Assembly: GCA_003427395.1 (NCBI GenBank)
Contig: BFEA01000029.1
Location: 1,361,617 to 1,425,616 of the forward strand
Length of the DNA: 64,000 nt
Direction: 5' to 3'
Source of the DNA: Chara braunii
Taxonomy: Eukaryota; Plantae; Charophyceae
The position numbers and the translations under genes were made by a program. Below are positions 3,282 to 52,165 of this stretch, piece after piece; within the stretch, counting starts at the first letter, position 1; each line of letters begins with the position of its first letter. The notes beneath the pieces were generated by a model, which saw nothing but the letters and a program-made list of their open reading frames with translations, ran no database searches and was not told the DNA's origin.

Positions 3282-3361
3282 CAGATGGACCACGGATCAG
3301 ATATTAAACTGATCAGAACAGATACTACAATTGATCTTAGCCAAAAGGCCGAGAAAGGTAT
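3282..3361 (-). pseudogene. U2: 3'-truncated U2 snRNA retrocopy
   Basis: The reverse complement ATACCTTTCTCGGCCTTTTGGCTAAGATCAATTGTAGTATCTGTTCTGATCAGTTTAATATCTGATCCGTGGTCCATC matches plant U2 nt 1-~80. An A-rich tail follows (3258-3281) and there is no Sm site. Confidence 0.9.
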
Positions 3362-3489
3362 GCTACTCATCTTTTGCAAGTTAAACTAGAGGGCTATATT
3401 AAATTAGGAATCCTTCTCCCTCTCTTCAGGCTGTTTATTTCCCCCCCACCCATTTTGCAGCAGCAGTCGCCGTGGCTATATTAAACCAG

Positions 3490-3730
3490 GGATCATGACT
3501 GTTGCTCACAAAGAGCTGGCGCGCCCGCGGCCAGTACGGCAGAGATTCTACTACTAGCACAGAACGAGAGATACTGACCGTAGATAATGGAGGTGAAAGG
3601 TCAGTACCTCTCCGAGCCAAAAGCCCCATTTGCCCAAATTCTTTCATTCTCGACCGTCGACGTCTGAAATCAAGGGACCGTAGGTAATGGAGATTCTGTT
3701 CATCTGCTTGCATCTGGATTTGAAACACGG
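3490..3730 (-). mobile_element. SINE family S1 body, inverted relative to 4793-5160
   Basis: High-identity inverted match to 4840-5155, e.g. GCTCACAAAGAGCTGGCGCGCCC and AAAAGCCCCATTTGCCCAAATTCTTTCATTCTCGACCGTCGAC. Confidence 0.75.
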
Positions 3731-3882
3731 TATGATTCGCAGCAGTAGAATCTCTGCCGTACCGGCCGCGGAAGCGTACCCTTTTATCACCAGCCGTAGA
3801 CTGATATTTCACTGGCAGGGACTCAAAGATGCTGACCTTGGATCTTGCAGTATCTACGGTCAGTATCTTCCACGGCGTGCTA

Positions 3883-3987
3883 CCGTCTTCACCCGAATAG
3901 GACGCCCGGTCACTATCGCCGTATCTGGGCTGAAAGTTGTGCCAAATACAGCTATAATGACCGGGCGTTCTATTCGGGTGAAGACGG
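3883..3987. mobile_element. 105-bp pogo-like MITE, TA TSD
   Basis: TIRs CCGTCTTCACCCGAATAG / CTATTCGGGTGAAGACGG, flanked by cTA...TAg. Confidence 0.92.
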
Positions 3988-4010
3988 TAGTTGAAATCTC
4001 CGCCACACCA

Positions 4011-4090
4011 GCCGGCTTAGCTCAGTTAGTACACCTATGAACTGTTGAAACGCAGACCTGAGTTGGGATCCGGATTCAACAAGACGAACG
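4011..4090 (+). mobile_element. tRNA-derived SINE head (family S1)
   Basis: GCCGGCTTAGCTCAGTTAGTA (A box) followed by a degenerate B box GAGTTGGGATCC. Confidence 0.65.
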
Positions 4091-4356
4091 AAGTTGCCGA
4101 AATTCCTAGGGCCGGGCAGTTTGACGATGGTATCTCAAGGCTGTCGCCCCTTTTTTTTTAATTATATATATATATATATTTTTAATGAAGCTGCCTTGTC
4201 ATCACATCATCAGGGGAGAGCTGTATATATATTTTTTAATGAAGCTGCCTTGTCATCACATCATCAGGGGAGAGCTGTATATTTTCCCCTCACCTCACGT
4301 ATATACTTAACTGGCGTTCTGCGATGTCATGGAACATATATCTTTCTTTCACTCCC

Positions 4357-4550
4357 TACCTACCACTACTCCTAAGGCTATACTGGGGACCCCGGCAAGC
4401 ATACCTTCGACCTCTCTTCGGCGAACGGAGGAGGTTACCTCTCTCTCCCAGTGGAGAGAGGTAACGGCATGTTTGCCCCTTTGCCCTAGTGTTTAGGGTG
4501 CAGGGTTGTGACCGCCAGTGGGGGCCCGGCTAACACAAGGACCGGGCATT
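4357..4550 (+). repeat. Structured dispersed repeat, homologous (inverted) to 55155-55295
   Basis: Shared blocks CTACCTACCAC, GACCCC.GCAAG.ATA, GCATGTT(T)GCCCCT, TTAGGGTGCAG.GTTG and CCAGTGGGG..CTAACA..AGGACCG.GC. Confidence 0.7.
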
Positions 4551-4792
4551 TTTGCCCACCCCCATCTAGTAACAGTAGTGTCTAAAGTTTACACTCTCCC
4601 ACATACCGCACGCAACCCGATCACACGCGCACTCACACCCGCGGTGGCTGAAGACCTTACTAAAAATAAAGGAGGGAAAAAGAAAAAAAGAAAAAAAAAG
4701 TCTCCGCCACAGTGGCCGTGAGCGCATCCGTCGTGTCAGCAGCCATTGGCCGAGATTCGACGACGTACTGAATTTTTTAATCTACGGTCAGT

Positions 4793-5160
4793 ATCGGCCT
4801 TCAGTTGGTACACACCCATGAACTGTTGAAATGCAGACCCGTGTTCAAATCCAGATGCAAGCAGATGAACAGAATCTCCATTGTCTTCGGTCAGTAACGC
4901 CCGAGGTTCTATTGGTGAGTGAGTGAGGACTGAGGGCCAAGTCTCACTTGCCAAATTCTTCATTTCTGTCCCTTGATGTCCGAGGTCGACGGTCGAGAAT
5001 GAAAGAATTTGGGCAAATGGGGCTTTTGCCTCGGAGAGGTACTGACATTTCGCCTCCATAATGTACGGTCAGTATCTCTCGTTCTGTGCTACGTAGTAGT
5101 AGAATCTCTGCCATAGTGGCCCCGGGCGCGCCAGCTCTTTGTGAGCACCAGTCGTGATTG
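4793..5160 (+). mobile_element. tRNA-derived SINE (family S1), head plus body
   Basis: TCAGTTGG A-box remnant and GTTCAAATCC B box. The body is shared with 3490-3730. Confidence 0.7.
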
Positions 5161-5282
5161 GCTGCGGGCAGCCAGGCTCTACGGTGCAGATCGACCTCTC
5201 GGGCTCTTCTCTGAGAAAAAGGGCCTCGTCGCACTGTTCACACCCACAGGAAGTAACTGGCAAGTGCATCTTTTCATGTCAT

Positions 5283-5592
5283 ACCCACAGGAGGACCTTC
5301 CTGGGTGGATATGACCGCAATTACATCCAGACTTGAATTTATATGACCACAATTACAGCCCGACTGAATGAATATGACCGCAATTACGTCCAGAGCGCAG
5401 TGGAAAAAGTTATCGTGCAAGGACGCTCTTATTGAAGGTTGCAAGGCACAACCCACAGGAGGACTTTCCTGAGTGGATGACCACAATCACAGCTAGACCT
5501 GAATGAATATGACCGCAATTTGACGTCCAAAGCTCAGAACGAGAATTTCTTGTGTGAGGACGCTCTCTTATTCAAGGTTGCACGGCACAACC
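5283..5592. repeat. Degenerate tandem repeat (~168-bp period with ATATGACCGCAATTAC subrepeats)
   Basis: ACCCACAGGAGGAC occurs at 5283 and 5451, with repeated GACCRCAATTAC. Confidence 0.8.
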
Positions 5593-6176
5593 TGTCACTT
5601 TTCATAGCGGCATATGTATCTAGTCAGCTATGTGAAGATGTACTCTCCGCTTTTTTTCACATTTGTTTGGTGTGTAATTCGGCATGCCCTGTAGACGAGA
5701 GTTGGACGCGGGATGAAACGCGCAGCACAGTTTTTTTTTTTTTATATAAAAATTTAAACGCAGTGGTGTCTCACATGCGACTGCACCGGTGATCAAGAAA
5801 AGACAAAAACAGGAAAAAAGCGAAAAAATGCTAAAAAGGCCATGCAGTGTGGTTCTGCCTGGCAATCCTAATAAGGAAAAAAAAATAAAAATCGATAGGG
5901 CCATAGTTCACTCACTTTCGTACTTTCCTAAAACTCGCGAAAAGATCATGAAAAGAGACTGCAGAGGATGGGTGTACACACGCTGGAAATTTATATTTTT
6001 AGTATTTTTTGTTATATTTGTAGTATTTGTTAAAAAGGCAACGTAGCCCAACCCAATTCGAGTTTCTGTCGAAATAAAAGCGCCCTGAAATGTTGAGATT
6101 TTCAGACCTGCAAAACGTTGTTGTGAAGGTTAAAACAGGCCGTTTTTTTGTTAACATCGAGAAGTTTTGCCCTGCG

Positions 6177-6383
6177 GCGAGGTCCCACTAGCAAAAAGGA
6201 TTGGATTAAGCTCCTGAATCCGGATGTGGTTTATGCCCATATATGCAGACTAAGCTCTTGAATCTGGATGCGTTTTATGCACGGTTGCAGAAAGGCAGTT
6301 CAATCGCCATTTTCTGCACCTCTCTACAATCGCGTCCAGATTCAGGCGTTGAATCCAATCCTCTTTTGCTAGTGGGACCTCGC
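6177..6383. mobile_element. Fold-back/MITE with ~55-bp imperfect TIRs
   Basis: GCGAGGTCCCACTAGCAAAAAGGATTGGATT versus AATCCAATCCTCTTTTGCTAGTGGGACCTCGC. TSD unclear. Confidence 0.75.
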
Positions 6384-6834
6384 TCTCTGTGGCGTGCTGG
6401 CGACGTGGAAAAGGTGTGGAGAAGAGTTTACGTGCCGATATATCTTTTTTTTTTTTTCCACCTTGTTTGATTCTTTTTTTTTGGCGACTCTCAGCGTCCC
6501 GAGGGGCTGGGGGAGGAAAGTGGGACCGGAAGGACGTCGCTACATTATTATTCTCCAAATTCGGAAGTGGTAATGCATCTGCCCAGTTCTAGCGGAAAGT
6601 TACGTTCGCCGTCTTGCACATTTGGGAAGTCGGATGGAAAAAAAGGACTGACATGACGCATTTGCGCTGCAAAGAGCATCTCTCCTCTTAGTACTCGCAG
6701 CCCATCGTCGCACTCGGAGCTTTCTGTGACGTCGTACCTAGATCGTAGTTGAGGTTCTATGCATCCCGGAAGAATGCCCTACCCAGTGTCGGTACTTCCA
6801 TCGTCACACTTGTCACGAAAAAGTTATCCCTCGC

Positions 6835-6950
6835 ACCTTTCTCGGCCTTGTGGCTAAGTAAGATCAAGTGTAGTACCTGTTCTGGCCAGTTTTTTTTTGT
6901 TTTTTTTTTCCAGTAAAGTTTAGTATTTGATCCGTGGTTCCATCCGGCCA
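6835..6950 (+). pseudogene. U2: 3'-truncated U2 snRNA retrocopy with TSD
   Basis: ACCTTTCTCGGCCTTGTGGCTAAG(TAAG)ATCAAGTGTAGTACCTGTTCT, then a T-run insertion, then GTTTAGTATTTGATCCGTGGTTCCATCCGGCC and an A-rich tail. TSD GAAAAAGTTATCCCTCGC (6817-6834) / GAAAAAGTTACCCTTGGC (6968-6985). Confidence 0.88.
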
Positions 6951-7059
6951 TAGTAAAAAGAAGAGAAGAAAAAGTTACCCTTGGCATGAACGTTGTCTGA
7001 TTGTTTCTGTTTACTGTAGCTGCAGGAACATCCGTACCAAAATAGGATTCCATAGTTGT

Positions 7060-7425
7060 ATACTGACTCTGCCGAGGCCGTATAACGCTCCATTTCACGA
7101 ATGTCAACTTCTGTTTCTTGTCCAAATACAGTTCGTTATGTGGAAGCAGCGGTATGGAGGAGGGCGAAGAAGGCCTTCCGGCTTCTGTTAGGGGCTCGTA
7201 GTCTCTTGAACTATACTGACTCTGTGGTGGTTGTATAACGCCCCATCTCAGGAACGTATACAAGCGACATTCCTGTCCAAATACAGTCAGGATGCAGGAG
7301 CAGCAATATGGAGGACGGTGAACGCCTAGGCCTTCCAACTTCTCTTGGGGGTCCGTACTCTGTGGAGCCCCCCTCTCCCCCCCCCAATCTCAGGAACGTA
7401 TACAGGCGATATTCCTGTGTCCAAT
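7060..7425. repeat. ~153-bp degenerate tandem repeat (2+ copies)
   Basis: TATACTGACTCTG..GTATAACG..TGTCCAAATACAGT..ATGGAGGA is repeated at ~7060 and ~7212, with a partial copy at ~7385. Confidence 0.75.
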
Positions 7426-7557
7426 TGTAATTTGGCGAAATAGGGTGTAAGGAGGGTCCGAGGTAAGGTCACTTTTGCGTAGGCTCCTAGGTATGGTCCC
7501 TTTTCCTTGCCGTTCTTCGTTCATGACCGGAGATTGTGAGATTAACGGACACAATTG

Positions 7558-7751
7558 ATGGAATCCGGGAAGTGGAACCTCAGTCCCCTTCTCCGCATCC
7601 CGTCTCATAATCACTCCACGAGGTTTTGGTCGGAATCATTGCGTAATGGCTGTCAGATATATCATGGGAAATTGTCGGGTGTGTATACCCTCTCCCTCTC
7701 CTCGGAAGATGCAACGAGTGCTGGGTCACCACAGCTGCTCACCCTCTCTTG
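7558..7751 (+). CDS. Probable first coding exon of the RCC1-family gene
   Basis: The ORF ends ...PQLLTLSW with a split codon TG|gtagat. The phase matches the G that opens exon 21637 and gives LSW-GAGEDGQLG (cf. VIAWGSGEDGQLG). The start ATG is uncertain. Confidence 0.45.
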
Positions 7752-8901
7752 GTAGATGCAATCAATGCTGAGTCACTACGGTTTTTATAGCGGAAGGCAA
7801 TCTTAGGCAGAGGGGTTTGCATGCTGTTGGGTGCATGCATGTGACCCTGAAAAAATTAAAGGATGTCACATTTAGCGAAAATGAGTCTTTCGGGACACAT
7901 TGTTGACGCACGGGGCCCAAAATTGCATGGCCCCTCAGATTAAAAGATCACACGCACAAATAGAGAAATGGTCCAATCAAAACAAAAAAGGGATGCCGGC
8001 AAAGAGAAGAAAATGATGCTTCACTTCGGCACGTCTGCGCCCCCTCTGAAAGATTTTTGCAATGACGTAGGTGCCCATTTGAAGAATGTAATGTATCTGG
8101 GCGGACACCTTTATAGAATGTATATGGACAGGAACCAGGGTGAGTACATTCTGGTCACAAAGTCCACGAGAGAATCCCACAGAACTGAATGCCCCGTTTT
8201 GGCTTTCGATCTTGTTCCTCTATGGTTGAGAACGCGGCGGACTTTAGGTAAATGGGACGTGTATCTCCAGGTAGATTCTATCCGTATAGGATTGGCCACT
8301 GAGGTGATTGTTAACCTCTGGAGGTCTACGTGTGGATTCTGACGACCGAGGATGCAGAATCGTAGCAGGTGGAACCTCCCTGAGTCAGATTTGATATGGA
8401 GCGGGCAGACTGAGCCCATCGTTAACCTCAAGGTCTCTGTAGGGAATCAACCTTGTTTTGCTCTTTCAGCAGAGATGCTTTTTTAGGGCAATTGCAATTT
8501 CTCATAGGCTTCAACAAACCACCCCTAGGAGGAAGCGGAATTGAAGAGAAAACAAAGGGCTGATTTCCTACGCAGGCCTCAGGACGTCAACCTTAAACCA
8601 CCAGTACACAGCCATACATGGGTCGCTGGCCCCCCACTGCCAGTTTCGGAGGCCTGATATGCGACGCCAGCCATTGATGAAATTTATCAGCGGGCGTGCC
8701 AGCCCCGACTTTTTCAGAGGAGGTGATGAACAATTCGCCACGAGGCTGGGGCCATGTACTCGCAGTTCTCTGTTGGAAATCAGCTCTCTTTTTTCTCTCA
8801 AACTTCCACGTGCTTCTTAGTGTGGCTGGTTGTAGCTTGTGAGAAAGTGTAAAACCGGTTGCAATTGCCCCTGAAAGCCTCTGCTGAGCACCTAAACTTA
8901 A

Positions 8902-9102: not shown

Positions 9103-9165
9103 TTAAGGTTGCTAGCTGAGAGGAGGACACGTGGTAATCTACCTTCTTTCTTTCATAGTAACCTG

Positions 9166-9267
9166 CCGTCTTCACCTGAGTAGAACGCACGGTCATTATT
9201 GCTGTACCTTGGCAAGTTGCACCAAATACAGCCGTTATGACCGTGCATTCTATTTGGGCGAAGATGG
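9166..9267. mobile_element. pogo-like MITE (diverged)
   Basis: CCGTCTTCACCTGAGTAGAACGCACGGTCAT / ATGACCGTGCATTCTATTTGGGCGAAGATGG. Confidence 0.82.
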
Positions 9268-10140
9268 TGCTGGCTTGCCATGCAGAAGAAGTCGTGGAGT
9301 AGACAAGTAGGCAGATGGGCACTGGGCCACTCTGCGTGTTTGCAAACATATAGAAATTCACTTGCAATCAAATGGGGGGTTGTGTTTCAATTGTATGGGC
9401 CTTCTTTAGAGGGGCTGTTCTGGGGTAGTTGCTCGTGTGGTGGGTAGATGTGAAAACATGGCGGAAAGCGTGTGTGCTAACCGGGGCAGAATTTTGCATT
9501 TGCTCTGGCTGTTGCGGTTTGCCTTGAGTGGCAGCTGTTACCTTCAACAAAATGAAAGTCAGTCTGAAAAGGAGATCTCTATGAGAGTGATCTCAGTCTG
9601 AAAAGGAGATCACACTGAGATTTATCGGAGTTCTGCAGGACCCGTGGCTTACATAAGCAGGCAATAAGCAGAGGTGATTTGTTTGATTACATTGATTTTT
9701 GTCTTGATCCTGAACTCCCTCGTGCTGGAATTGGTGCCAGTGGCTGCCTGGTTGGTGTCTCTTCATGCCTCTCAGTTGCAAATGGATCTGGGGAATACTC
9801 ACATGCCACTGATGTGTGAGTCTCAGGTGTTGAAACTTGGCTGTTCTTTTCTTTTGTTTTATTTTCTGAATTTTCTCCCTCCAATTAAGGTTGTGAAGAG
9901 CAGCCTGCAGACATGGGGCAACCCCGTAGCTGCATTCATACTGTGGGTTGTTTTGGAGGGTGGTGAAGGGGGGTACAGACAGGGTTACTCTGGCAGTGGG
10001 TGTGGAGATGGGGCTAGATTATCATGGTGTCAGGGGTGTAGTTGCTCAACTTAGCAACGTGGCTGAGTGAGCAAGTCAAATGATGGAGCTCTGTTTTTTT
10101 TTTTTTTTTTTTTTTNNNNNNNNNNNNNNNNNNNNNNNNN

Positions 10141-10185
<45 letters not shown>

Positions 10186-10188
<3 letters not shown>

Positions 10189-10264
10189 ATGTGTGTCATC
10201 CATGCGCAGGGGCCATGCTAATCTTCTCTGTATGGTTCCAATTTTAACGGATGTCCCGAAGGAC
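10186..10264 (-). pseudogene. U6: U6 snRNA copy running into a (CA)n tract
   Basis: Reverse complement GTCCTTCGGGACATCCGTTAAAATTGGAACCATACAGAGAAGATTAGCATGGCCCCTGCGCATGGATGACACACATAAA. The 3' end is replaced by (CA)n, a gap and poly(A). Confidence 0.93.
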
Positions 10265-23095: not shown

Positions 23096-23268
23096 GTGAG
23101 GGCAGCTCTCTTCTCCCTTAGATAGATGAAAGGCTGAAAGGTTCTCAACTTCTCAGCGCATGCCCACACACTAGCACTTTTTTACTCGTTTCTGGATGGA
23201 ATGTTGGCCACATGCATACAGGTCTGGGTGTAAATGTGGTCAGATACATTTAAGATAGTGCTAGTTGT

Positions 23269-23367
23269 GTCCTTCGGGGACATCCGTTAAAATTGGAACC
23301 GTACAGAGAAGATTAGCATGGCCTCTGCGCAAGGATGACATGCATAAATCGAGATATGGTCCAAATT
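23269..23367 (+). pseudogene. U6: Near full-length U6 snRNA retrocopy with A-rich tail and TSD
   Basis: GTCCTTCGGGGACATCCGTTAAAATTGGAACCGTACAGAGAAGATTAGCATGG...GGTCCAAATT, tail 23368-23397, TSD AAGATAGTGCTA at 23252 and 23398. Confidence 0.95.
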
Positions 23368-23409
23368 ATATTAAGAAAATTAAAAAGAAAAGAAAAGAAG
23401 ATAGTGCTA

Positions 23410-23899
23410 CTGTCTTCACCGGAAAATAACGCCCGGGCGTCATAATGAGTAAATTGGTGGCAACTTCGGTGGGCCCCTGAAATTCCGGGAAACAAAAATT
23501 CAAAAAATTCTGTTAAAAAAAATGTTGTTCAGGCTGAGGGTCACTACAGAATTCCTTACAGACTCGGAAAAAGAAAAAGAAAAAATTCAAACCGAAATAT
23601 GCCACTTGAAGTCGAAACCCCTTTCAACCCCCTTTAAAACCCATGCATATCCCCACCCTGCCCTTTCAAACCCTGCATATCCCCACCCCGCCCTTTCAAA
23701 CCCATGTCTATTACCTCTACAAGGCACTCTGCGCATGGAACATTCAAATATAACGCCCGGGCATTCTATTCGAATATAACGCCCGACCCTTCTATTTGAA
23801 GGGGCGTTCTATTTGAGAAAAAGAGATTAAAAATGCAAATCTGATCTTTTTCGGGGAAGTTGAATATATCGCCCGGCCGCTATTTTTGGTTGAAGATGG
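23410..23899. mobile_element. 490-bp pogo-like non-autonomous element, TA TSD
   Basis: TA|CTGTCTTCACCGGAAAATAACGCCCGGGCG ... CGCCCGGCCGCTATTTTTGGTTGAAGATGG|TA. Confidence 0.85.
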
Positions 23900-29600: not shown

Positions 29601-30028
29601 TTAAGGGCCATGCCTGAGCAACAAGGTGTTCTAGCGGGATTTGAATCCTGCTGATTTGCGCCACCTGATGGAAGCGGTGACAAACGAACAGAGAGCATGG
29701 GAACAAATACCTGATGAATATGGTCGCAAAACTCACAAACACCCGATGAACATGGTCACAAACGCGCAGAGAATGCAATCTCTGCATGTTGTGACCGTGT
29801 CTGTGTGTTTGCGATTGTGGTCATCAGGTTATCTTTGTCCATGTTGCATGGAGTATGCCTGCATGTGCGTCTGAGAAACGTTAAATGGCCTGGAAAACAC
29901 CATAGCTGCGGTAATACAATCACATGACATCTTTAGTTACTCCCCAAGTGGATCTCATTCGTTCAGGCGGAGTGATAAACCGGTCTGGATGGCTTTTTTT
30001 AAGTTTTTTTCCTTCTTCTTGCCTTTTT

Positions 30029-30133
30029 ATTTGGACTGGTTCTCGATCTATGTTTCATCCTTGAGAGTGCGCAGGGGTTATGCTAATCTTCTTTCTCTGT
30101 ATCGCTCCAATTTTAAGGGATGTTCCGAATGAC
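30029..30133 (-). pseudogene. U6: Diverged U6 snRNA retrocopy with tail and TSD
   Basis: Reverse complement ...TTAAAATTGGAGCGATACAGAGA..GATTAGCATAACCCCTGCGCA..AAGGATGA..ATCGAGAA..GTCCAAAT. T-rich tail 29994-30028. TSD AACCGGTCTGGA (29978) / AACAGGTCTGGA (30134). Confidence 0.88.
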
Positions 30134-30827
30134 AACAGGTCTGGACATCAGGTTTGTTGATAATAATGAAACCCCGACCGGCCTTGATGAGGTTTCCCAG
30201 GTAATATTTTGAGCTCAGTTGCAAAGGGTGGTTTTTATCTGCGTGGTTTTTATCTGCGTCGCACATGGTCTGCCTGACATTACTGTTGGTCCGGATGACA
30301 TGCTTGCATCGTCCACGGGAGCGGAATGGACGTCTGTGATTTTGTAATATATTCGCACTGTACGGAATGGAAACTCGGGAGAATATGATCGTTAGCTGTA
30401 GAGGCCTCGGAGTTCATGATCGTTATATCCATAGAGGCCGCCGCCTGAAAGAGAGAGCGAATTGGAATACAAACAACTTTTAGCTGAGGGTCACATCAGA
30501 ATTCGTCATGGAACTGAAGATTAAAAAAGAAAATAACCAAATCACACTAAGGCACCCCCCTATAAACCCCTTAAGCACCTTAAAAATTCATTTATAATCT
30601 CCTCCCCCCCCTTGACAGCCAGCACTCAAAAAAAGAAAAGAGCCCACCGGATTTGGGCTCTTCTTGGAGGTCGTGGAAAACCCCCATCGCCAATTTCTTC
30701 TTTTCTTTTTCTTTTTTTTTTAATTGTTTTCCAATCCCCCCCCCCCGGCTGCCCGTTTAGGTGTCACGTCCGGGTGACCGGCCAGTCCAGACCGGCTGGT
30801 CGTGAAAATCTTCCCAAGCCTGAACCT

Positions 30828-33323: not shown

Positions 33324-34511
33324 GTAAGCCATCTTTTCTTTTTGTCCAATTGAAATTTTCCGTCGTAGAGAAGACGTAAATAGAAGTGCTTTTTTGAAGT
33401 TTTCCTTTTTCAACTCCCTTGTGCCCTTCAAATAAAACTAAAAGGAGGGCGGAGTGGGGGGGTTGGGGGGGGTTGGTTTGGGGGGGGCGCCGCTGGGCTA
33501 TTTTATTACTGATGTCATCTTGATAAAAAATGCATGCATTGCCTTGAGAACTGGGCCCCGGTTTTTTGGTTTCCTTTGGCAAATAAGTAAATACTAATAG
33601 TAAAATACATGAAGTCACTGGAAAACAAGGAAACCAGGTTAAGATGACGGTGTCCAGAATTTCCCAACATGAATCACTCACGATTCATCAGAAAGTAGTA
33701 GACAATGTACTTTACTCTTGACTAGTCTTTAGTAGTCTTTAGCGTCTTCACTTCTTTTTTCTTTTTCTTTTTTTTTCCGAGTGTCTTCACATTTTGAGTA
33801 ATTAAGAAGGGTGAAACTGTGAAGCCCTCACCGCAATTCATCAGAAAGTAGGTGGGAAATCTACTTCACTCTTCACGTTACTTGAGGATTTAAGTAGTGT
33901 GAAACTGTGAAGCCCTCCTTATCCCCCTGACCAAAAAGGGGGGGGGGGGGGGGAACGGGATGAAGAAAATGTGGAAATGTTTTAAAAAATGACAAAAAGG
34001 CTGATTGAATATCACTTTTTTGAAAATTTATCTGTGTAGTTAGACTGGCACGCGCGCTATGATCTTGTTCAATTGATGATGCGAAACTCGTCATTGTGAC
34101 TGCCATTCATCGCAACTCCAGGAGAATAAGAATGAGACAAAGGGAGGGGAAGAACGAGGGAAGTGACAATGCCATTCATCGCAACTCGAGGAGAATAAGA
34201 ATGAGACAAAGGGAGGAGACGAACGATGGAAGGAAGAAGAACTCGAGGTTGAACCGATGCCATCTCCCTTGTCAATATGATTCCATCATCAGGTTCTCCT
34301 CTTATTTGTCGTCAGTACAGTAACAATGAATGATGAATGAACAAGGTAGCAATGCTCAAATTACCTCCCTCGCAGCCAGCGCACAAGGAACTCTCCTTTG
34401 GCTCTCCATCCATCTCTTCTCCCAGTAGTGCTACTAGCTTTGGTGGATCATCCCAGCCCTGTGAGGGATCTTGTTAGAGGACAACACACTCCTACCCCAC
34501 TGCGACTGCCA

Positions 34512-34616
34512 CCGTCTTCACCTGAATAGAACGCCAGGTCATTATAGCTGTATTTGGCACAACTTTCTGTCCAGATGCAGCAATAATGACCGGGCGTTCT
34601 ATTCGGGTGAAGACGG
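34512..34616. mobile_element. 105-bp pogo-like MITE
   Basis: CCGTCTTCACCTGAATAGAACGCC ... GGCGTTCTATTCGGGTGAAGACGG|TA. Confidence 0.9.
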
Positions 34617-35975
34617 TAGTACTGTCCCTTCCTCTGGCCACGTTTTAATTACGGGTGAGGCCCATGTTCAACTGGTACCTCAAGTCTGTTTGTTGATGCC
34701 CACCTCCCTTTTTCCACCAGTACAAAGGCCTCCGCTTGACTCCATAGCGCAATGTGGCCTTCTTCTTCCTCCCTCCATAGCTAGACTGTTCCATCTCTTC
34801 TTCACCGGATTCGTCTATGGTCGTGGAGGTCTTCTTCAGCACCCTCTTGATCCTAATCACCCTAATGTTGCTGCTGGGTGAATTTCCAGCCTGACTGTCC
34901 TCCGAACTACACCCTCTTTGTCCTGGCTCTTCCTTTGGACACCCAGTGCCATTAGACCAGGTGGAAGTGTTCCGAGGCCTACCAATTCCCTCGCTTGGGC
35001 AGGGCCATCGCTGCGAACTCGTGTACCGAACTGTACCCTGCAGATGAGTGTGCCTAGGTTGTTGCAAGTCTAAGATTTGGTTGTGTACCAGCCTGACATG
35101 TAACTGTTAGCCCACCGGATTCCACAGCTGGATTGACTTTCTGAACTTTCTGGGAAATTCCTGTTTTGTCCCTGTTAAATTTGACTGTTGTCCCTGGTCG
35201 TGCTATATCATGTGTGTCAAAATTTTGTTCTGCCTCTGCGACCGTGTCTACTTGTGAATCCATCTGTCTCGGGGTGACAGAGTTGGAGCACGAGAACATC
35301 GTTAGCAGATGGAACACATTAGAAGTTAGCATGCACGAGGAACACCCACTTACACATTGACTATCAAACACATAGGCTAAGATAACCCAGATCAGGGCGA
35401 AAGCAGCACCTTTCACGGACTATCAGATCCGATAACAGAGAGTAAGAAATCTCCCACAAATCAGGGCAAAAGGAGCACCTTTCTAAGCTTCTGATCCGAA
35501 AGTGCGTAAGTTAGCCAATTTCGTTGAGAAACGCGGATCCCGCCACTTTCCGAGATCACAGGGCGCCGCGCTTTGTTATGGGTACGTTTTCAGTCCATGT
35601 GTAGGTGGCACGTCAGCCGTGATGAACGGCCCAACGGCGCTAAACAAAATGGAAAGGTCGAGGACCCCTACCCCTACCGAGAAAGATGCCGCAAAAATGA
35701 GTCGCCCTTTTCAATGTCCGTCCGTGGAGCAGAGAACTGTACGACGCTGGAGGCCAGGCCATATGGCGGGCCACAGGAACGTCCGTCTCTGTGGAAGCCC
35801 GAAAAAATTCGACGTGGTACTTGGGAAAGACCTGCGGAACCCGCCTGTGTGGAGTCCCGGTTTGCTTTTCTGCCCCGCACTACCCGTGTCCATCATTCAA
35901 GGGACTTTCTTGTTTTTTCTCTTTTTACGTTTGGATCAGCGCCTAAGAGAATTTTTTTTGTGTTTTTTTTTTTTT

Positions 35976-36078
35976 TTTGGACCACTTTTTGATTTATGCA
36001 TGTCGTCCTTGTGCAGGGGCCATTTGCTAATTTACTCTTCTCTGTATCGTTTCAATTTTAACAGATGTCCTTCGGGAC
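35976..36078 (-). pseudogene. U6: U6 snRNA retrocopy with poly(A) tail
   Basis: Reverse complement ...ACATCTGTTAAAATTGAAACGATACAGAGAAG..GGCCCCTGCACAAGGACGACATGCATAAATC..GTGGTCCAAA plus an A tail. Possible short TSD AGAGAA (35946/36079). Confidence 0.9.
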
Positions 36079-36998
36079 AGAGAACACAGAGTTCTCAGGC
36101 TGAAATTGAACAAATTATTGCACTTGCTGTTCTTTTTTATTGTCTTTCTGTTTGTTTTTTTGTCTTTCTGTTTTTCTTTTTTTTTAAAAGAAAAATTCAG
36201 AACCCATGTGAAATTAGCAAGTGAGATCTCAATTCGTGACAAAGCTAGACTTGCTAGTAAAAAAAAAAAAAAAAACCATCGGGGCATCGGCCTTCTTGCT
36301 TAGCTAGCACGAATCTGGTCTTGTCTTCTGGTTGTGATGTTCGTGCTCTCAAAAACCATTTTCCAGTGTGCTTTCTGTGGCTGCTCCCCTCACCTGCTCT
36401 TGCACTTGACTCAATTGCCATATTTGGTTCTGCGGTTTCATGGAAGGCCATCGGTAGCTGTTGGTCTATCACATAATATGCACTATTATGGAGGGATTTC
36501 ATTCACTGCACCACTATTGCTTTCATGCTGCTACCTCGTTTTTGTTGTCGATATAATAAGTCTACGGCCGGAGTGTGCTGCTGCTGCTTGTGCCCAGTGC
36601 GGTGGAAGTGCCCGAAATTCCAATAGAAGAAAAAGGAGAGCTGGAAGAGAGAGAGAAAGACGGACAGCCCGTAAGGCTGAAGCGTATTCAGTACTATTCA
36701 CATACTAGTAATAAACACAAACGCAAAACCAGATGGAATCAGATTGATACAATAATGTTAAGACCGCTAAAATGATATTCATGCTAGTGTCTTTAGGGGT
36801 TGTTCACCAAAGGGAAAAAAAATTGAAGTGATGAAACTTTGCACTCCAGTTTTGTCTGCCTCTGGTGATTGATATGCTGCAAGACCTCTATCCCACTCCA
36901 GGGCAGTAGTTTTGCACATTGCATTGTCCTTTTTCTTGGAGTCTTGTGTGTGCATGTGTCCATGTGCATGCATGTGTGTGCGCAAGGGGATGTGCTCT

Positions 36999-39854: not shown

Positions 39855-39892
39855 CTGTCTCTTATACACATCTAGATGTGTATAAGAGACAG
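39855..39892. other. Nextera mate-pair junction adapter (assembly artefact)
   Basis: Exact 38-bp mosaic-end palindrome. The ~70 bp before it are repeated at ~39966-40035. Confidence 0.98.
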
Positions 39893-41268: not shown

Positions 41269-41881
41269 GTATACCTTCTTGTGCTGCCTCCCTCCCCTGT
41301 GTATATTAGGCAAAAATGGGAATGCTATCTGTATGATCCAATGTAAATCCTTGTACCGCAGGGCATGAACAACCATGACCAAGCCTTGAAACCGGCGACA
41401 GTCTCCTTGGTGTGTTGTGTGATGTGATGGCAGAGAGGGCTAGGGGGGACCATGGAAGGAGGTAGAGGTATTAGAAAATGTAGAAGTTGGTCGTCCTCGA
41501 GAGTTAGGGGTGTCTCTATGGTAGCGCCGGGGGGGGGGGGGCTCGTCTGAGACCCTCGGAAGGTGCGGGTTGGTGTATGTCTGGGTCTAGAGACAGCTCT
41601 GGGTCGCACCGCTGTAGGACTCGACTTGCGATCTGATTAGGACAAAAAAGGTTCATGAATGATGCCCCCTGGAGGAGACTGCCCTTGGGGCTGACACAAG
41701 CCTTATCTGATCTCCCCACTGCTAGAGTACAACGATAGGGACCTCCCGAGGCCTAGCATCCAGCCTCTGCTATGATCTGGACTTAAAAAAAAAAAAAAAC
41801 TACGAAAGAGAGAAAAACTTTGAAAAAGACAAATCTTGCCTACCACGATCGTACAAAACTTTCTGAGAATTATCTCAGGAC

Positions 41882-42160
41882 CTAGGCTACTAGAGTGGCC
41901 CAGGGCCACTTGCCCGGCCGGGCCAGAAAAAAGAAAAATTTAAGTTTATTAAAGTTTACTCTAAAAAACAATGGGAAAGAATTTCGATGTGACCCTGAGG
42001 CAAAAGTTGTTCAGTTTTTGTTTTTGCATAACATAGTTTTTTTGGGAGTTTTTTTTGTCTTTTTCTTTCTTTTTTTTTGCTAGGACCTTCCCTGGTCCTT
42101 GCACGGCCGGGCTGTGTCCGGGAAAATAGGGTGACCCGGGCGGCCCGGCTGGTAGCCTCG
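41882..42160. mobile_element. hAT-like MITE (CTAGGCTAC TIR), 8-bp TSD
   Basis: CTCAGGAC|CTAGGCTACTAG ... CTGGTAGCCTCG|CTTAGGAC. Confidence 0.85.
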
Positions 42161-43291: not shown

Positions 43292-43316
43292 NNNNNNNNN
43301 NNNNNNNNNNNNNNNN

Positions 43317-43367
<51 letters not shown>

Positions 43368-43433
43368 TGGGGTGTCCTTACAGTGCTTTTGTGGGTTGTC
43401 CTCTTGTGGTATTGTGACTGCAATGTCTCACAG

Positions 43434-47445: not shown

Positions 47446-48902
47446 TAGAGTTTTTGAACTGTAAGTCAGCCTCACTCCAGTTGGGATTAGAAGCGGAATG
47501 CGATGTGGGCTTCAGATTCTGCAGTTTTCATTCAAAGAAATGCGTGCAGTACCCATACACAAACATACACATGCACACGACCACATATATGGATCCATGC
47601 ATAGAGATGCCAACAGGGGGACGCACGCCGCCATGACACACGTACACATGCGTAAAGGCAGAGACGGACATGCACTGAGTGTAAGATGCAGATGCATGTA
47701 CGAGCATTTTGGAAACGTTTTCATAGACTGTGTGATCCCGACCTAACCCAGGTCGTCTCCGGTTGACACAGTGTACATATAGATCGATCTTTGAGCGAGT
47801 TGTAACCATCGATTGATTATCTTGACCGTATCGGTTGAATCTTGAATTATTTAAAAATTGAGGATCTTTTATATATATATCGTCAAATCTTTTATATATA
47901 TGAGTCGGTGGAACTCCGACGAAGCAGTTTGTCACAGCCCCTCGTTTGTTGTCCTCTTCTCCCTCTCTGCCTACGGTTTACCGGGCAGTTCTGTTTGACG
48001 ATATATGACGATATTGACGATATATTGACGATATATATATATGTTTCTTGTCCTCTTCTCCCTCTCTGCCTATGGTTTACGGGGCAGCTCTGTTTCATGA
48101 TATATATCGTCAAACAGAGCTGCGCGGTAAACCGTAGGCAGATTTTTTTGTTTTTTGGGGGTATTGGAAAGTTGACGACAAGTATCGTATACAAAATCAG
48201 TATTGCATACATATTACATAGTTATTCGGGGGTGAATTTGGGGGCGGAGAGGGGTGAGGAAGGAAGGAAATTGTGAATTTTGAGAAAAGGGAAGGGCGTA
48301 CACGTCTGTTGTTTTGTCTGATCACTTTTTTTTAGAAGTGGATGAATGAGTGCAAGGAAAATCTATTTTTAGAAGTGGATGAATGCAAGGAAAATCTACA
48401 TCTACATCTGATGAAATATGTCCATGTTCAGGAAATCAATCGGAGGACGGAACATTCGAAATGCATTTGAATTTTGAAATGAAATGGACCAGCTTTTTGG
48501 TGTCAGGTATTACTGTTCTTGGATGGGACAAAGGGAGGGACATGACTACAAAAATACTAAAAAGTATATAAAAAATAGTGCAATACACCATTGCAGTGGA
48601 CGGAAGCAGTTTCGTGACCAAAGAGTTTGTGGATTAGTGACAAATGCCGATATCATATATCGGAGTCGTGGATGAAATCAAAACTCTGTACATGTTTTCA
48701 AGTAACTAAAAAAACGAAAAAATAATCCTGGGTGAGAAGAGCGTGAAATTTGTGAACAAATTAGCTGGAGCTGAACTATCTACTACTTTATTTGGATAGA
48801 GAATTAAACCTTGATGACAACGGCATTGAGAAGAATGATAGGAAAAAAAAGGGCGTTCACTTGCGAGCGTTATTTTGTTGAGAGGGGGTTCGAACCGTTA
48901 AA

Positions 48903-49258
48903 ATCCGTTAAAATCAAATCGGAACCTAGAATACCAGCCGGGCCGCCCGGGTCCTGGGTGGCGAGCCCGTGCAAGGACAAAGGACGGTCCCAGCAAAAAA
49001 AAAAAAACCGGGAAAAAAACAATGTTATGCAGAAAAATAAACTGAAAAACTTTTGCCTCAGGGTCAAATCGAAATTCTTACCAAATTTCAAATCAAAAAT
49101 AGATTTAAAAATTATTTTTATTTTTATTTTTATTTTTTGGCCCGGCCGGGCAAATTACCCCGGGCCACTCTGGTAGCCTAGATCGGAACTGTATAGACAA
49201 TTAGTATCAGGCCCCTTCGCAAGGATGACACACATAAATTGAGAAATGGTCCATAATT
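48903..49258 (+). pseudogene. U6: U6 snRNA retrocopy interrupted by a hAT-like MITE
   Basis: ATCCGTTAAAAT..GGAAC [MITE] ...GGCCCCTTCGCAAGGATGACACACATAAATTGAGAAATGGTCC, then an A-rich tail. Confidence 0.85.
48926..49181. mobile_element. hAT-like MITE (CTAGGCTAC family), 8-bp TSD
   Basis: ATCGGAAC|CTAGAATACCAG ... CTGGTAGCCTAG|ATCGGAAC; inverted relative to 41882-42160. Confidence 0.9.
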
Positions 49259-49898
49259 AAACCAGGGGAAAAAACAAAAAAAATCAGCGTTGTTCTTGTA
49301 TGCAGTTTGTGTCAGCTTTGTGGGTGGGAGAACTGGCTTTCTGGGAAGGCAACAAAATGGTGGTGGTGGTTTGTGGAAAGGCTCTAAATGATATTCCAGG
49401 TAATCAACAATGGGCATGCCACTGTGTGAAGTGGTGGTTTGTGGAAAGGCTCTAAATGATATTCCAGGTAATCAACAATGGGCATGCCACTGTGTGAAGT
49501 GGTGGCGGTTTAAACTAGCGCTCTTTCTGAGGGCAAACAATTGGGGGGACCAGTAGCACAGGTTCATTAGAATTTACAGGGAGCAGAGTGTGGAAAACCG
49601 ACAGTGGCAAAAATTAAATTGAAAATGTGTTGAATTGCATCCTCGATTCACTTCGGGGTTTAAGCGATCTTTTTAAATTTCAAGATGTCTTTTCCTGGAA
49701 AGATCACGAGCAAATCTATGAACCCTCCGATTTTCAAAGTCTTTAACTCGTTCCTTGGAGCGCGAAAAATCACCAAGGTTGGAGTATTTTTCGTGATATG
49801 TTTACTGGAAAGATGACGACTGAATTTACGGATGATCGAATTTTTATAATTTCTGTGATTTTTCTGAGTGCAAAAAAGCACCGAAGTTGTTGCATTAA

Positions 49899-50239
49899 AT
49901 CACCAGTACTTGGCCCAGCTATTGATGCCGAGCCTGGAATGCCCCTGCGCGCCAACCAGTACCTCGGCGAGCCAAAAAAAAAAAGGTGCGGCCATTAACG
50001 CGCCGCGACTTTAGGGGGGTCGGGGCAGGCTTGGTAGCACGATGGAGAAAAAGCAGTCCGGCCCAAGGAAAAGGGGCAAGTGGATTGTAGGCTGTCCGTG
50101 TCGTTTATGGCGAGCATGTTTCCACATGCACGCACACAGCACAATCAAGAGAATAGAAAGAAAAAAATGAAAACAGGGAAAAAAAAAAAAAAAAGTACCC
50201 GCCACTTGGCAGGCAACAAAAACGGCCCTCGTGTGGTAG
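49899..50239. mobile_element. TTAA-family MITE (right end degenerate)
   Basis: TTAA|ATCACCAGTACTTGGCCCAGCTATTGATGCCGAGCCTGGAATG matches 8902. The right boundary is tentative. Confidence 0.65.
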
Positions 50240-50679
50240 TTAAGGGCCATGCTCCACAACTCTCCAAATATGCAAAACGACAAGGCTGAATCTTCCATCG
50301 GAATATGGATAGATACATGTCTTTGTACATGTGGAGAGTACAGCCTGACAAATCCTTCTTCTTTGGCCTTGGCTCCACTAGTCTCCACATGCACGAAAGA
50401 AAGAACGCCATGGTGATGTATCTTTCAGTGTTCAAGGGGAGTAGGAGGATTCAGAGCACATTTTTCGCGGTCCCACTTTCAGTCTCCACTTGAACTCAAG
50501 TGGGACGCGAAAAATCAAAATCATCGTTCCACCCCGCCCTGGGGAAATGCTTTTTTGTTTTCACATTTTGCATCTCAAGTGCCCGCTCTTGAAACTCGAG
50601 TGCAGCCCAGGCAAAATCGCACTCGAGTTCAAGTCACCTCCCGGAGGCACTTGAAGTACATCTCTTACGAGGAGTTTCT

Positions 50680-50715
50680 TTCATATGTCAAGGCTGGTGA
50701 GGTTTTGCGCGTTGT

Positions 50716-50748
<33 letters not shown>

Positions 50749-50750
50749 AG

Positions 50751-50802
<52 letters not shown>

Positions 50803-50832
50803 AGTGTTTAACACGTTAGCTAGGTCCCTCAT
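50680..50832 (-). pseudogene. Mitochondrial-type SSU rRNA fragment (probable NUMT)
   Basis: Universal CCGTCAATTCCTTTGAGTTT and AATTAAACCACATGCTCCACCGCTTGTGCAGGCCCC. The context GGTTTTGCGCGTTGTATCG resembles plant mitochondrial 18S. Only ~150 bp. Confidence 0.85.
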
Positions 50833-51424
50833 CGAATCGCCCCCAAACCCTTGGGTTTCAGCTGCGGGTGCAGGGTTTTTTCTTTTTCTTTTTCTTTTAC
50901 GCCCCGCGTTCCTGGGTCACGGCATGTCCTTTTTGCGGTCCAGTGAGCAACGGCTACCGGTGGCGGTACCGGGTGCCACTGTTGAGGCGGACATATTCAA
51001 GGCCGGGTGCCGGCCTGCTGGATCGAAAACCCGCCGGTGGGTCTCCTCACAAGGGGGAGCCAGGGTGGTTCGGTCTCTAGTGTGCACGGAAAGAGGAGGC
51101 GGCGTAGTGTAAATTAATCAAGATTTCGCGATTAGGGCACACTTGAAACTCAGAGTTCTCAAGTGGTGTGGAACGAGGCTCTCAGTCTCATTGTGCACAT
51201 TGGCTTGGCCCTTTAGTTTCCCTCGCTTGCAAAATGAGACTGAATCGTCCACTACAACACGGAAAGATACATTGCCATATTTGGAGAGGGGTGAAGCAAC
51301 GCCCACACTTTTCCTTTTTTTAGTTTTTTATTTTATTTTAGCAAGAACTATCTTCGCCGTTTCTGACGTGACACCCCGTGAGAGAAGGGGAGCAGTCAAC
51401 TGAAAACTGTCATTTCACGGTTTT

Positions 51425-51458
<34 letters not shown>

Positions 51459-52079
51459 TATTATTTTTATTTATTATTATTTTTTTAATTATTTTTTTTT
51501 TATTTTATATTAACTACAATGTGCCATCTATTCTGAGGGGCAGTGTCCGTTTGCTTATCACTGGAAGTGCTCTTTCTTTTGTTTTGTTTTTACGAGGACT
51601 GCTCTCTCCAGAATGTATCTGACTGCACTTGTGGCCACGCCCAGAATGTATCTGACTGCACTTGTGGAAAACGGCAGGCGGTACCGGTGCCAGTCCACAA
51701 AATACCTAAGCTGGTTCCCGCCCCCTCCAGGCTCGGCAGCCCTTGGCGCGCAGGCAAAGAGGAGGGCCGGGCCTTAACAACCGGATTTAAATTGGGGGAT
51801 TCCCTCAAAACTTGCCCCAACAAGGGGGGAGGGCTATTTCCTGGTGACGAAGGGAGTGGTGGTTTAACGTGCAATTTATGTCCTTTCACTTCAGTTTCAC
51901 AGAATGACTGTTGCAATTTGCGAATGTGGATTTTTTCAATTTTTCTGTTGGACATAGACAAGTTGGTAGTTCTGACGATATAGCGGACAGATGAATGCAT
52001 TGAATCTGAATTATGATTTTGGTCAACTAGAAGTAGATGAATGCAAAGGGTGACCGTCAGAAAGAACAAGCACAACTAT

Positions 52080-52165
52080 GCCCTCCTTGGAAACATCCGT
52101 TAAAATTGAGAAGATTAGCATGGCCCTTGCACAAGGGTGACACGCATAAATCGAGAAATAGTCCA
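52080..52165 (+). pseudogene. U6: U6 snRNA copy with internal deletion
   Basis: ACATCCGTTAAAATT[deletion]GAGAAGATTAGCATGGCCCTTGCACAAGGGTGACACGCATAAATCGAGAAATAGTCCA; the ACAGAGA box is lost. Confidence 0.9.

What the first reader, a model, noticed from the sequence alone, without database searches (positions are those of the whole stretch)
3282..52165. Dense swarm of spliceosomal snRNA retrocopies (6 U6 + 2 U2 in 64 kb): possible U6-derived SINE-like system
Seen: U6 copies at 10186(-), 23269(+), 30029(-), 35976(-), 48903(+) and 52080(+), and U2 copies at 3282(-) and 6835(+). They are dispersed, lie on both strands, are independently mutated, and show no recognisable USE promoter. Several have A-rich tails and TSDs (12-18 bp in three cases, a possible 6 bp in one). 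Established: tail plus variable TSD is the signature of LINE target-primed reverse transcription, and snRNA retropseudogenes are best known in mammals. Inference: about one copy per 8 kb would mean very large genome-wide numbers, so either a LINE that avidly mobilises snRNAs or a self-amplifying U6-derived family in a green lineage.
Basis: partly seen in the sequence, partly recalled or inferred. Interest (0 to 1): 0.82.

Follow-up and report, generated by a model that had tools for sequence, protein, structure and literature searches.

The report
U6/U2 snRNA retrocopies in Chara
This stretch of the stonewort alga Chara braunii holds seven dead copies of the splicing RNA U6 and two of U2, pasted in one by one through reverse transcription as in mammals; they are much denser here, but nothing shows that they copy themselves.

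Summary
Observation confirmed. I add a seventh, decayed U6 at 7885-7975.

The genome is Chara braunii. The copies share only the snRNA body and their flanks are unique. Most U6 copies start at RNA position 1. None has a USE or TATA upstream. Seven of nine carry A-rich tails, and six have target-site duplications of 6 to 17 bp. Both U2 copies are cut short near nucleotide 80-90, the class that dominates human U2 pseudogenes.

Best reading: retropseudogenes made in trans by a LINE-type enzyme, not a self-propagating SINE.

Ten independent Chara loci (223 kb) hold two U6 hits at gathering score, plus three or four fragments. That is about 9 per Mb, against 78 per Mb in this window and about 0.3 per Mb in human. 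So the window is 4-9 times denser than that sample, yet the genome still carries roughly 10^4 copies.

This scan had already flagged dense U6 retrocopies in many other windows of this genome.

The parts
3282..3361 (-). U2 retrocopy, U2 nt 1 to about 80, 3'-truncated. An A-rich tail follows at 3258-3281.
   Evidence: Rfam U2, 97.3 bits. The 5' 75 nt are nearly perfect. Tail located. No clear target-site duplication.
3181..3218 (.). Nextera mate-pair junction adapter left in the assembly. It is not part of the U2 copy. Rfam aligned it as U2 stem-loop IV.
   Evidence: The same 38-nt palindrome is also at 39855-39892 and at L007 18578-18615.
6817..6983 (+). U2 retrocopy. Duplication 6817-6833, U2 nt 1 to about 90 at 6834-6953 with an internal T-run, tail 6954-6967, duplication 6968-6983.
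   Evidence: Rfam U2, 39.3 bits, E 2.2e-4. Duplication GAAAAAGTTATCCCTCG / GAAAAAGTTACCCTTG.
7877..8016 (+). Duplication GAAAATGA at 7877-7884 and 8009-8016, body 7885-7975, A-rich tail 7976-8008.
   Evidence: blastn, E 3.5e-4. Sequence. Alignment score 26 against a control maximum of 16. Not found by Rfam.
10094..10264 (-). U6 retrocopy, nt 1-78 at 10187-10264. Then (CA)n at 10141-10186, assembly gap at 10116-10140 and A22 at 10094-10115. The 3' structure is unresolved.
   Evidence: Rfam U6, 75.6 bits. Sequence.
23252..23413 (+). Best-preserved U6 retrocopy. Duplication 23252-23268, full-length U6 at 23269-23367, 30-nt tail (70% A), duplication 23398-23413.
   Evidence: Rfam U6, 93.3 bits. 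Duplication of 12 exact nt, about 17 with one mismatch and one indel.
29982..30145 (-). U6 retrocopy. Body 30029-30136, tail 29990-30028 (67% A), duplication TCCAGACC at 30138-30145 and 29982-29989.
   Evidence: Rfam U6, 46.2 bits..
35946..36084 (-). U6 retrocopy. Body 35979-36078, tail 35952-35978 (93% A), duplication TTCTCT at 36079-36084 and 35946-35951.
   Evidence: Rfam U6, 66 bits..
48866..49296 (+). Old U6 retrocopy split by a MITE. Duplication 48866-48876, U6 5' part to 48925, MITE 48926-49181 (its own duplication ATCGGAAC at 48918-48925 and 49182-49189), U6 3' part 49190-49258, tail 49259-49285, duplication 49286-49296.
   Evidence: Rfam U6, 36.8 bits for the 3' part. MITE family alignment. 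Sequence. Coordinates.
52078..52172 (+). U6 copy with an 11-nt internal deletion. It keeps a T-run at its 3' end and has no A tail and no duplication. A separate TIR element lies at 52201-52695.
   Evidence: Rfam U6, 60 bits..

Best explanation
The nine elements are processed pseudogenes of the Chara braunii U6 and U2 spliceosomal RNAs.

Proposed mechanism: mature U6 RNA, and 3'-shortened U2 RNA, were copied into DNA at staggered chromosomal nicks by the endonuclease and reverse transcriptase of a resident LINE acting in trans (target-primed reverse transcription). Two routes are possible. The enzyme may have jumped from a poly(A) template to the snRNA, or it may have used an oligoadenylated snRNA directly.

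Each event left an snRNA body that starts at RNA position 1, an A-rich tail, and a target-site duplication of variable length. The copies carry no promoter, so they are most likely dead on arrival and have decayed independently, to between roughly 10% and 30% divergence.

Shown here: the anatomy of the copies, their independence, the lack of promoter motifs, and a density far above the mammalian one.

Inferred: the LINE as the enzyme source, the way the template was recruited, and transcriptional silence.
For: - **Identity.** Rfam U6 and U2 hits, plus the extra copy.
- **Species.** Chara braunii, assembly GCA_003427395.1.
- **Independence.** All-against-all BLAST of copies with 1.5-kb flanks aligns only the snRNA body. 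Of 18 flanks of 400 bp, 12 have no other match in 287 kb, and the rest hit unrelated small repeats.
- **RNA-defined ends.** U6 copies begin at GTCC, which is RNA position 1, and end at CCAAA plus 0-2 T.
- **Tails and duplications.** Seven A-rich tails (62-93% A in those measured). Duplications of 6, 8, 8, 11, 16-17 and 17 bp.
- **U2 pattern.** The two U2 copies are truncated a few nt apart near nt 80-90. Doucet et al. 2015 (PMC4476161) describe 98% of characterised human U2 copies as 3'-truncated in short single-stranded purine-rich segments, about 88% with duplications.
- **Possible templates.** The same paper describes U6/poly(A) copies and both recruitment routes. U6 can be adenylated in cells (PMC5855946).
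- **No promoter.** No USE or TATA upstream of any copy.
- **Age.** One copy carries a nested MITE with its own duplication. CpG-type changes are common.
- **No consistent subfamilies.** 98 private substitutions. The 47 shared variant states pair different copies at different sites.
- **Not confined to this window.** Two Rfam-grade U6 copies plus three or four fragments lie in 223 kb from ten other scaffolds.
Against: - No LINE reverse-transcriptase ORF turned up. The 20 ORFs scanned against Pfam gave none, and a simple motif screen of 70 of the 84 ORFs of 180 aa or more in the 287 kb was blank. The partner therefore rests on earlier unchecked notes of this scan.
- There are too few duplications to derive a nick-site consensus.
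- U6 at 52078 has neither tail nor duplication. The 3' end of U6 at 10187 is hidden by a gap and a (CA)n run.
- The U6 pieces in the ten other loci mostly lack tails and duplications. Part of the genome-wide load may therefore belong to another class, such as passengers in other elements.
- Three copies share the 2-nt variant AAC-CG-TACAG, decayed to CA or TG in two of them, in place of AAC-GA-TACAG. That points to more than one source sequence.
- My TSD permutation test gave only P 0.04-0.09 for the best cases, because microsatellites in the window inflate the null.
Confidence: 0.8

Rival explanations
1. A self-propagating, U6-headed SINE. Some retrocopies are themselves transcribed by Pol III, from an intragenic element or a fortuitous upstream one. 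Their A-tailed RNA is then mobilised again by a LINE, so the swarm descends from master retrocopies and not from the true U6 genes.
For: - Very high density: 78 per Mb here and about 9 per Mb in independent loci, against about 0.3 per Mb in human (PMC4476161).
- Three of seven copies (10187, 23269, 48877) share one 2-nt variant.
- U6 promoter architecture differs between eukaryotes, and yeast U6 has an internal A block (PMC5855946). An internal element in Chara therefore cannot be ruled out.
- snRNA-headed SINEs exist (SINEU, PMC4494074).
Against: - The copies share no module beyond the U6 body, and the tails are heterogeneous.
- Ends coincide with the mature RNA ends.
- Shared variants are mutually inconsistent apart from that single site.
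- Kojima 2015 states that no internal promoter has been reported for snRNA genes.
- No upstream USE or TATA.
- The shared variant is equally well explained by a second bona fide U6 gene.
Confidence: 0.1
2. The copies were made by a reverse transcriptase other than a LINE's. One candidate is the Penelope-like elements reported in this genome, which prefer microsatellite targets. Another is an LTR-retrotransposon enzyme.
For: - U6 at 10187 abuts a (CA)n run.
- Penelope-like elements show an insertion bias for microsatellites (PMC8557442).
- Earlier unchecked notes of this scan report U6 cassettes inside LTRs and a (CA)n-targeting retroelement.
Against: - A-rich tails with duplications ranging from 6 to 17 bp fit LINE nicking, not the fixed short duplications that integrases make.
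- Only one of nine copies touches a microsatellite, and the U6 sequence ACACGCA can itself seed (CA)n after CpG decay.
Confidence: 0.06
3. DNA-level copies or live genes: a cluster of functional or recently inactivated snRNA genes, a segmental duplication, or passengers of one DNA transposon.
For: U6 at 52078 keeps a T-run like a Pol III terminator and lacks a tail. Small TIR elements lie close to several copies.
Against: - No shared flanks.
- No USE or TATA.
- Every copy carries substitutions or indels in conserved U6 or U2 positions.
- Tails and duplications are present in most.
Confidence: 0.03

Closest known systems
Mammalian U6 and U2 snRNA processed pseudogenes made by L1 (Van Arsdell 1981; Doucet et al. 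2015, PMC4476161)
   Same: - Promoter-less snRNA bodies, full length at the 5' end.
- U6 followed by poly(A) or an A-rich tract.
- U2 3'-truncated within a short segment.
- Variable target-site duplications in most copies.
- Dispersed on both strands.
   Different: - The host is a streptophyte alga. My literature searches found no report for the green lineage.
- Density is roughly 30 times the human one by my sample, and about 250 times in this window. Thresholds differ: Rfam gathering score here, 90% identity or more in the paper.
- U6 far outnumbers U2 and the other snRNAs: 7 : 1 : 0 at gathering score in 287 kb. In human, U2 hits outnumber U6.
- No U6-LINE chimera was seen among these nine.
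SINEU, the snRNA-headed SINEs of crocodilians (Kojima 2015, PMC4494074)
   Same: An snRNA-derived 5' part, mobilised by non-LTR retrotransposon machinery.
   Different: - SINEU heads are U1 or U2, and each family shares a body and a 3' terminus of its own.
- Here the copies are a bare U6 or U2 plus a heterogeneous A-rich tail, with no shared extra module.
Chimeric retropseudogenes formed by LINE template switching in mammals and Magnaporthe (PMC2104539)
   Same: A LINE enzyme copies an abundant nuclear small RNA. Direct repeats of 10-20 bp flank the insert.
   Different: Those are bipartite or tripartite fusions with LINE or other RNA 3' parts. The fungal 5' partner is not U6. No such fusion was found in this window.

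Membership tests
LINE-mediated snRNA processed pseudogene | The snRNA body begins at RNA position 1 and lacks the gene's upstream promoter. | tested here: met
   U6 copies at 10264, 23269, 36078, 30136 and 7885 start at or next to GTCC. No USE (up to 2 mismatches) or TATA lies within 100 nt upstream of any copy. Caveat: the motif used is the land-plant USE, and the Chara motif is not known.
LINE-mediated snRNA processed pseudogene | An A-rich 3' tail, or 3' truncation in a short purine-rich segment. | tested here: met
   Seven of nine copies have A-rich tails, 62-93% A in those measured. Both U2 copies are truncated near nt 80-90.
LINE-mediated snRNA processed pseudogene | Target-site duplications of variable length that bracket body plus tail. 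| tested here: met
   Lengths of 6, 8, 8, 11 (2 mismatches), 16-17 and about 17 bp in six of nine copies. One is unclear, one is hidden by a gap, and one has none.
LINE-mediated snRNA processed pseudogene | Independent insertions into unrelated sites. | tested here: met
   Only the snRNA body aligns between copies. Flanks are unique in 287 kb.
LINE-mediated snRNA processed pseudogene | A nick-site consensus matching a resident LINE endonuclease, and a resident poly(A)-tailed LINE. | tested here: inconclusive
   Too few sites for a consensus. The 20 ORFs scanned against Pfam gave no reverse transcriptase, and a motif screen of 70 of the 84 ORFs of 180 aa or more was blank. L1-like LINEs in Chara are known to me only from unchecked notes.
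SINE (self-propagating, Pol III-transcribed) | An internal Pol III promoter that travels with the copy. | not testable with these tools
   No internal promoter has been reported for snRNA genes (PMC4494074). Yeast U6 does have an internal A block (PMC5855946). Chara U6 promoters are uncharacterised.
SINE (self-propagating, Pol III-transcribed) | A shared body or 3' module beyond the RNA-gene head. | tested here: not met
   Homology between copies ends at the U6 3' end, and tails differ.
SINE (self-propagating, Pol III-transcribed) | Subfamilies defined by diagnostic mutations inherited from master copies. | tested here: inconclusive
   One 2-nt variant is shared by three of seven copies. All other shared states are mutually inconsistent. 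The sample of ten copies is too small.
SINE (self-propagating, Pol III-transcribed) | Transcripts arising from the dispersed copies. | not testable with these tools
Functional U6 snRNA gene | Intact conserved sequence, upstream USE and TATA, and a T-run terminator. | tested here: not met
   Every copy has substitutions or indels in conserved positions. None has USE or TATA. Only the copy at 52078 keeps a T-run, and it has an 11-nt deletion.

The most novel reading that the evidence does not exclude
Chara braunii carries on the order of 10^4 U6-derived insertions, one to two orders of magnitude denser than in mammals. Part of them descend from a variant source (AAC-CG-TACAG) that is itself a transcribed retrocopy. 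That would be the first U6-headed, self-propagating SINE, or else evidence of a LINE with an exceptional built-in preference for U6.
Probability: 0.12. Interest if true: 0.7.

Novelty: new member of a known kind. Interest (0 to 1): 0.38.

Why it matters
snRNA retropseudogenes are a textbook by-product of L1 activity in mammals and have been used as markers of LINE dynamics. Finding the same three signatures in a streptophyte alga says two things:
- A U6 body with an A tail, 3'-truncated U2, and variable duplications all recur here. Trans-mobilisation of spliceosomal RNAs is therefore an old, general property of non-LTR retrotransposition and not a mammalian peculiarity.
- The density is some 30 times the human one. 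Chara's roughly 2-Gb genome must have had long-lasting, relaxed LINE activity together with slow DNA loss.

In practice, thousands of U6 look-alikes will inflate ncRNA annotation of this genome. They could also serve as neutral age markers. None of this is categorically new.

Tried and rejected
   - they were masked in my local BLAST database;
   - they were left out of all queries;
   - they appear only in one local MAFFT alignment.
2. **Shared flanks, segmental duplication, or carriage in a transposon.** Rejected.
3. **U6 at 52078 as a U6-X chimera ending at the poly(A) at 52467.** Rejected. That poly(A) lies inside a separate TIR element at 52201-52695.
4. **U6 at 49163 as a member of a 'repeat with a U6 tail'.** Rejected. 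The repeat is a MITE inserted into an older full U6 copy, and its relatives elsewhere are not followed by U6.
5. **Search for a LINE partner.** The 20 ORFs scanned against Pfam gave DUF7869, RCC1, a Ulp1 protease and an integrase, but no LINE reverse transcriptase or endonuclease. A simple motif screen of 70 of the 84 ORFs of 180 aa or more was also blank.
6. **Full-length U2 at 3175-3361.** Rejected. The 3' half is an adapter artefact.
7. **The Chara genome paper** is not held in the library. No paper on snRNA retrocopies in Chara or other green lineages was found.
8. **My first TSD permutation test** was weak, because microsatellites inflate the null.

Full report
**What is there**

Rfam at gathering thresholds finds five U6 matches: 10165-10264(-), 23269-23370(+), 30025-30136(-), 35971-36085(-) and 52078-52172(+). 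It also finds one U2 match at 3175-3361(-). At E up to 1 it adds a U6 at 49163-49260(+) and a U2 at 6834-6983(+).

Three corrections follow.
- Only 3282-3361 of the first U2 match is U2. The rest of the 'full-length' alignment rests on a 38-nt palindrome at 3181-3218, which is the Nextera mate-pair junction adapter. The same palindrome recurs at 39855-39892 and in an unrelated locus. This is an assembly artefact.
The copy begins near 48877-48887 and is interrupted by a 256-bp MITE at 48926-49181 with its own 8-bp duplication ATCGGAAC. It resumes at 49190.
- A seventh, strongly decayed U6 lies at 7885-7975(+). It scores 26 against a maximum of 16 for 1208 control tiles of the window. Rfam does not detect it.

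**Whose genome**

A transposase-like ORF in the window (57442-58878, DUF7869) is 87% identical to a Chara braunii protein. Its paralogues lie on ten scaffolds of assembly GCA_003427395.1. The U6 sequence is of the plant type.

**Anatomy of the copies**

Between copies, only the snRNA body aligns. With 1.5-kb flanks on each side, no flank homology appears. Twelve of the eighteen 400-bp flanks have no other match in 287 kb, and the rest hit unrelated small repeats.

The U6 copies begin at the RNA's first nucleotide (GTCC...). They end at ...GGTCCAAA plus zero to two T, which is at the natural 3' end with most of the U-tract missing.

Seven of nine copies are followed by A-rich tails, 62-93% A in those measured. 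Six are bracketed by direct repeats:

| Copy | Duplication |
|---|---|
| U6 at 23269 | about 17 bp, 12 of them exact |
| U2 at 6834 | 16-17 bp |
| U6 at 48877 | 11 bp with two mismatches |
| U6 at 30029 | 8 bp |
| U6 at 7885 | 8 bp |
| U6 at 35979 | 6 bp |

My permutation test gave only P 0.04-0.09 for the best cases, because microsatellites in the window inflate the null. The repeats do, however, directly abut the RNA start on one side and the end of the A-rich run on the other.

Three copies do not fit cleanly:
- U6 at 10187 stops at nt 78. A (CA)n run, the assembly gap 10116-10140 and then A22 follow, so its 3' structure cannot be judged.
- U6 at 52078 keeps a T-run and has neither tail nor duplication.
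- The U2 at 3282 has a tail but no clear duplication.

No land-plant USE (up to two mismatches, right strand) and no TATA lies within 100 nt upstream of any copy.

The other three gaps are more than 2 kb from any copy, and no claim crosses them.

**Comparison with what is known**

Doucet et al. 2015 (PMC4476161) sorted human snRNA copies into four classes: alone (the genes), chimeric with retrotransposons, poly(A)-extended, and 3'-truncated. About 80% had variable duplications. U2 copies were 98% 3'-truncated within short single-stranded purine-rich segments. U6/poly(A) copies were explained either by an early template switch from a poly(A) tail or by direct use of polyadenylated snRNA.

The window reproduces this pattern. 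U6 copies are full length with A-rich tails. The two U2 copies are cut a few nucleotides apart near nt 80-90. The nearby but non-identical cut points argue for independent events, not a shared truncated master.

U6 adenylation is documented (PMC5855946). The same group found U6 chimeras with L1, L2 and RTE elements in other vertebrates, so the process is not tied to one LINE clade.

**SINE or direct retrocopies**

A SINE would need a promoter that travels with the copy, and usually a shared body or tail.
- The copies share nothing beyond U6.
- Their ends are those of the mature RNA.
- In an alignment of ten copies there are 98 private substitutions. The 47 shared variant states pair different copies at different sites, as expected from CpG decay and chance and not from common descent.
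- The exception is AAC-CG-TACAG in place of AAC-GA-TACAG. It occurs in the copies at 10187, 23269 and 48877, decayed to CA and TG in two of them. This shows at least two source sequences. They could be two U6 genes or a master retrocopy, and ten copies cannot decide.
- Kojima 2015 notes that no internal promoter is known for snRNA genes. Yeast U6 does have an internal A block, so the point is not closed for Chara.

I put the SINE reading at about 10%.

**Is the window an outlier?**

Ten loci on ten other scaffolds were chosen by DUF7869 paralogues, so without regard to snRNAs. They total 223,070 bp.
- They hold two U6 matches at Rfam gathering score and no U2, U1, U4 or U5.
- That is 9 per Mb (95% interval 1.1-32) at gathering score and 22-27 per Mb with fragments. 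The window has 78 and 109 per Mb.
- The window is thus 4-9 times denser than the sample (binomial P about 0.008). Some of this is expected, because the window was picked for its count.

Scaled to a 1.75-Gb assembly (the size is from my own knowledge), the sample gives about 16,000 Rfam-grade copies, with a range of 1,900-57,000. The human figure in Doucet et al. is 906 hits at 90% identity or more, about 0.3 per Mb. The thresholds differ.

The outside copies mostly lack tails and duplications, so the genome-wide load is probably a mix of classes.

Earlier notes of this scan report dense U6 retrocopies in many other windows, U6 cassettes inside LTRs, and abundant L1-like LINEs. They are unchecked AI notes. 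They agree with my sample but are not independent proof.

**What could not be done**

Expression, read-depth copy number and gap continuity therefore remain untested, and I worked beside those places afterwards.

The 20 ORFs scanned against Pfam gave no LINE reverse transcriptase, and a simple motif screen of 70 of the 84 ORFs of 180 aa or more in the 287 kb was blank. The enzyme source is therefore inferred from the insertion signature alone.

My literature searches found no report of snRNA retrocopies in Chara or elsewhere in the green lineage. The Chara genome paper itself is not in the library.

**Verdict**

This is a real, well-preserved set of LINE-type retropseudogenes of U6 and U2. It is a known kind of element in a new host at unusually high density. 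The self-amplifying reading is not supported, though it is not excluded.

Noticed in passing
window 3181-3218 and 39855-39892; L007 18578-18615: The 38-nt Nextera mate-pair junction adapter (CTGTCTCTTATACACATCT joined to its reverse complement) is embedded in the published assembly. Local joins at these points are suspect. Rfam mistook one of them for U2 stem-loop IV.
   Followed up: partly
window 50429-50796 (-): A fragment of bacterial-type small-subunit rRNA (Rfam 83 bits, model positions 875-1387 with large deletions). It is probably an organelle-derived insert or part of an rRNA-carrying repeat.
   Followed up: no
window 48926-49181; relatives at window 41879-42154(-), L002 18737-19037, L009 12398-12545, L005 7691-7788: A MITE family of about 256 bp, with CTAG(R)(M)TACCAG-type inverted ends and an 8-bp duplication (hAT-like). 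One member splits an old U6 retrocopy.
   Followed up: partly
window 52201-52695: A TIR element of about 495 bp with perfect 25-nt inverted ends (CAGATCCCACCTCTATTCTTTTTGG) and an internal poly(A). It sits 28 nt after the tail-less U6 copy.
   Followed up: no
window about 2746-2854, 3877-3988, 9163-9268, 34511-34622: A family of palindromic repeats of about 110 bp that align in both orientations (77-91% identity). They are MITE-like and unrelated to the snRNA copies.
   Followed up: no
window 57442-58878 (-): An intact-looking DUF7869 ORF (478 aa), 87% identical to Chara braunii CBR_g59742. It belongs to a paralogue family on at least ten scaffolds, with relatives in a liverwort (Riccia), a fern (Adiantum) and marine invertebrates.
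   Followed up: partly
window 53704-53783 and 55790-55920: GT/CA-rich hairpin-forming microsatellites that produce a cloud of sub-threshold microRNA hits in Rfam. These hits are spurious.
   Followed up: no
window and L001-L010 (287 kb): At Rfam gathering score, U6 : U2 : U1/U4/U5 is 7 : 1 : 0. In human BLAST counts U2 exceeds U6 (PMC4476161). Capture in Chara looks strongly biased towards U6.
   Followed up: partly
L006 17630-17774 (-): Two U6 3' halves lie in tandem about 50 nt apart, and the second ends in an A-rich run. Together with the tail-less pieces at L001 4502-4608, L003 17240-17305 and L009 1807-1906, this suggests a second class of U6-derived sequence in this genome.
   Followed up: no
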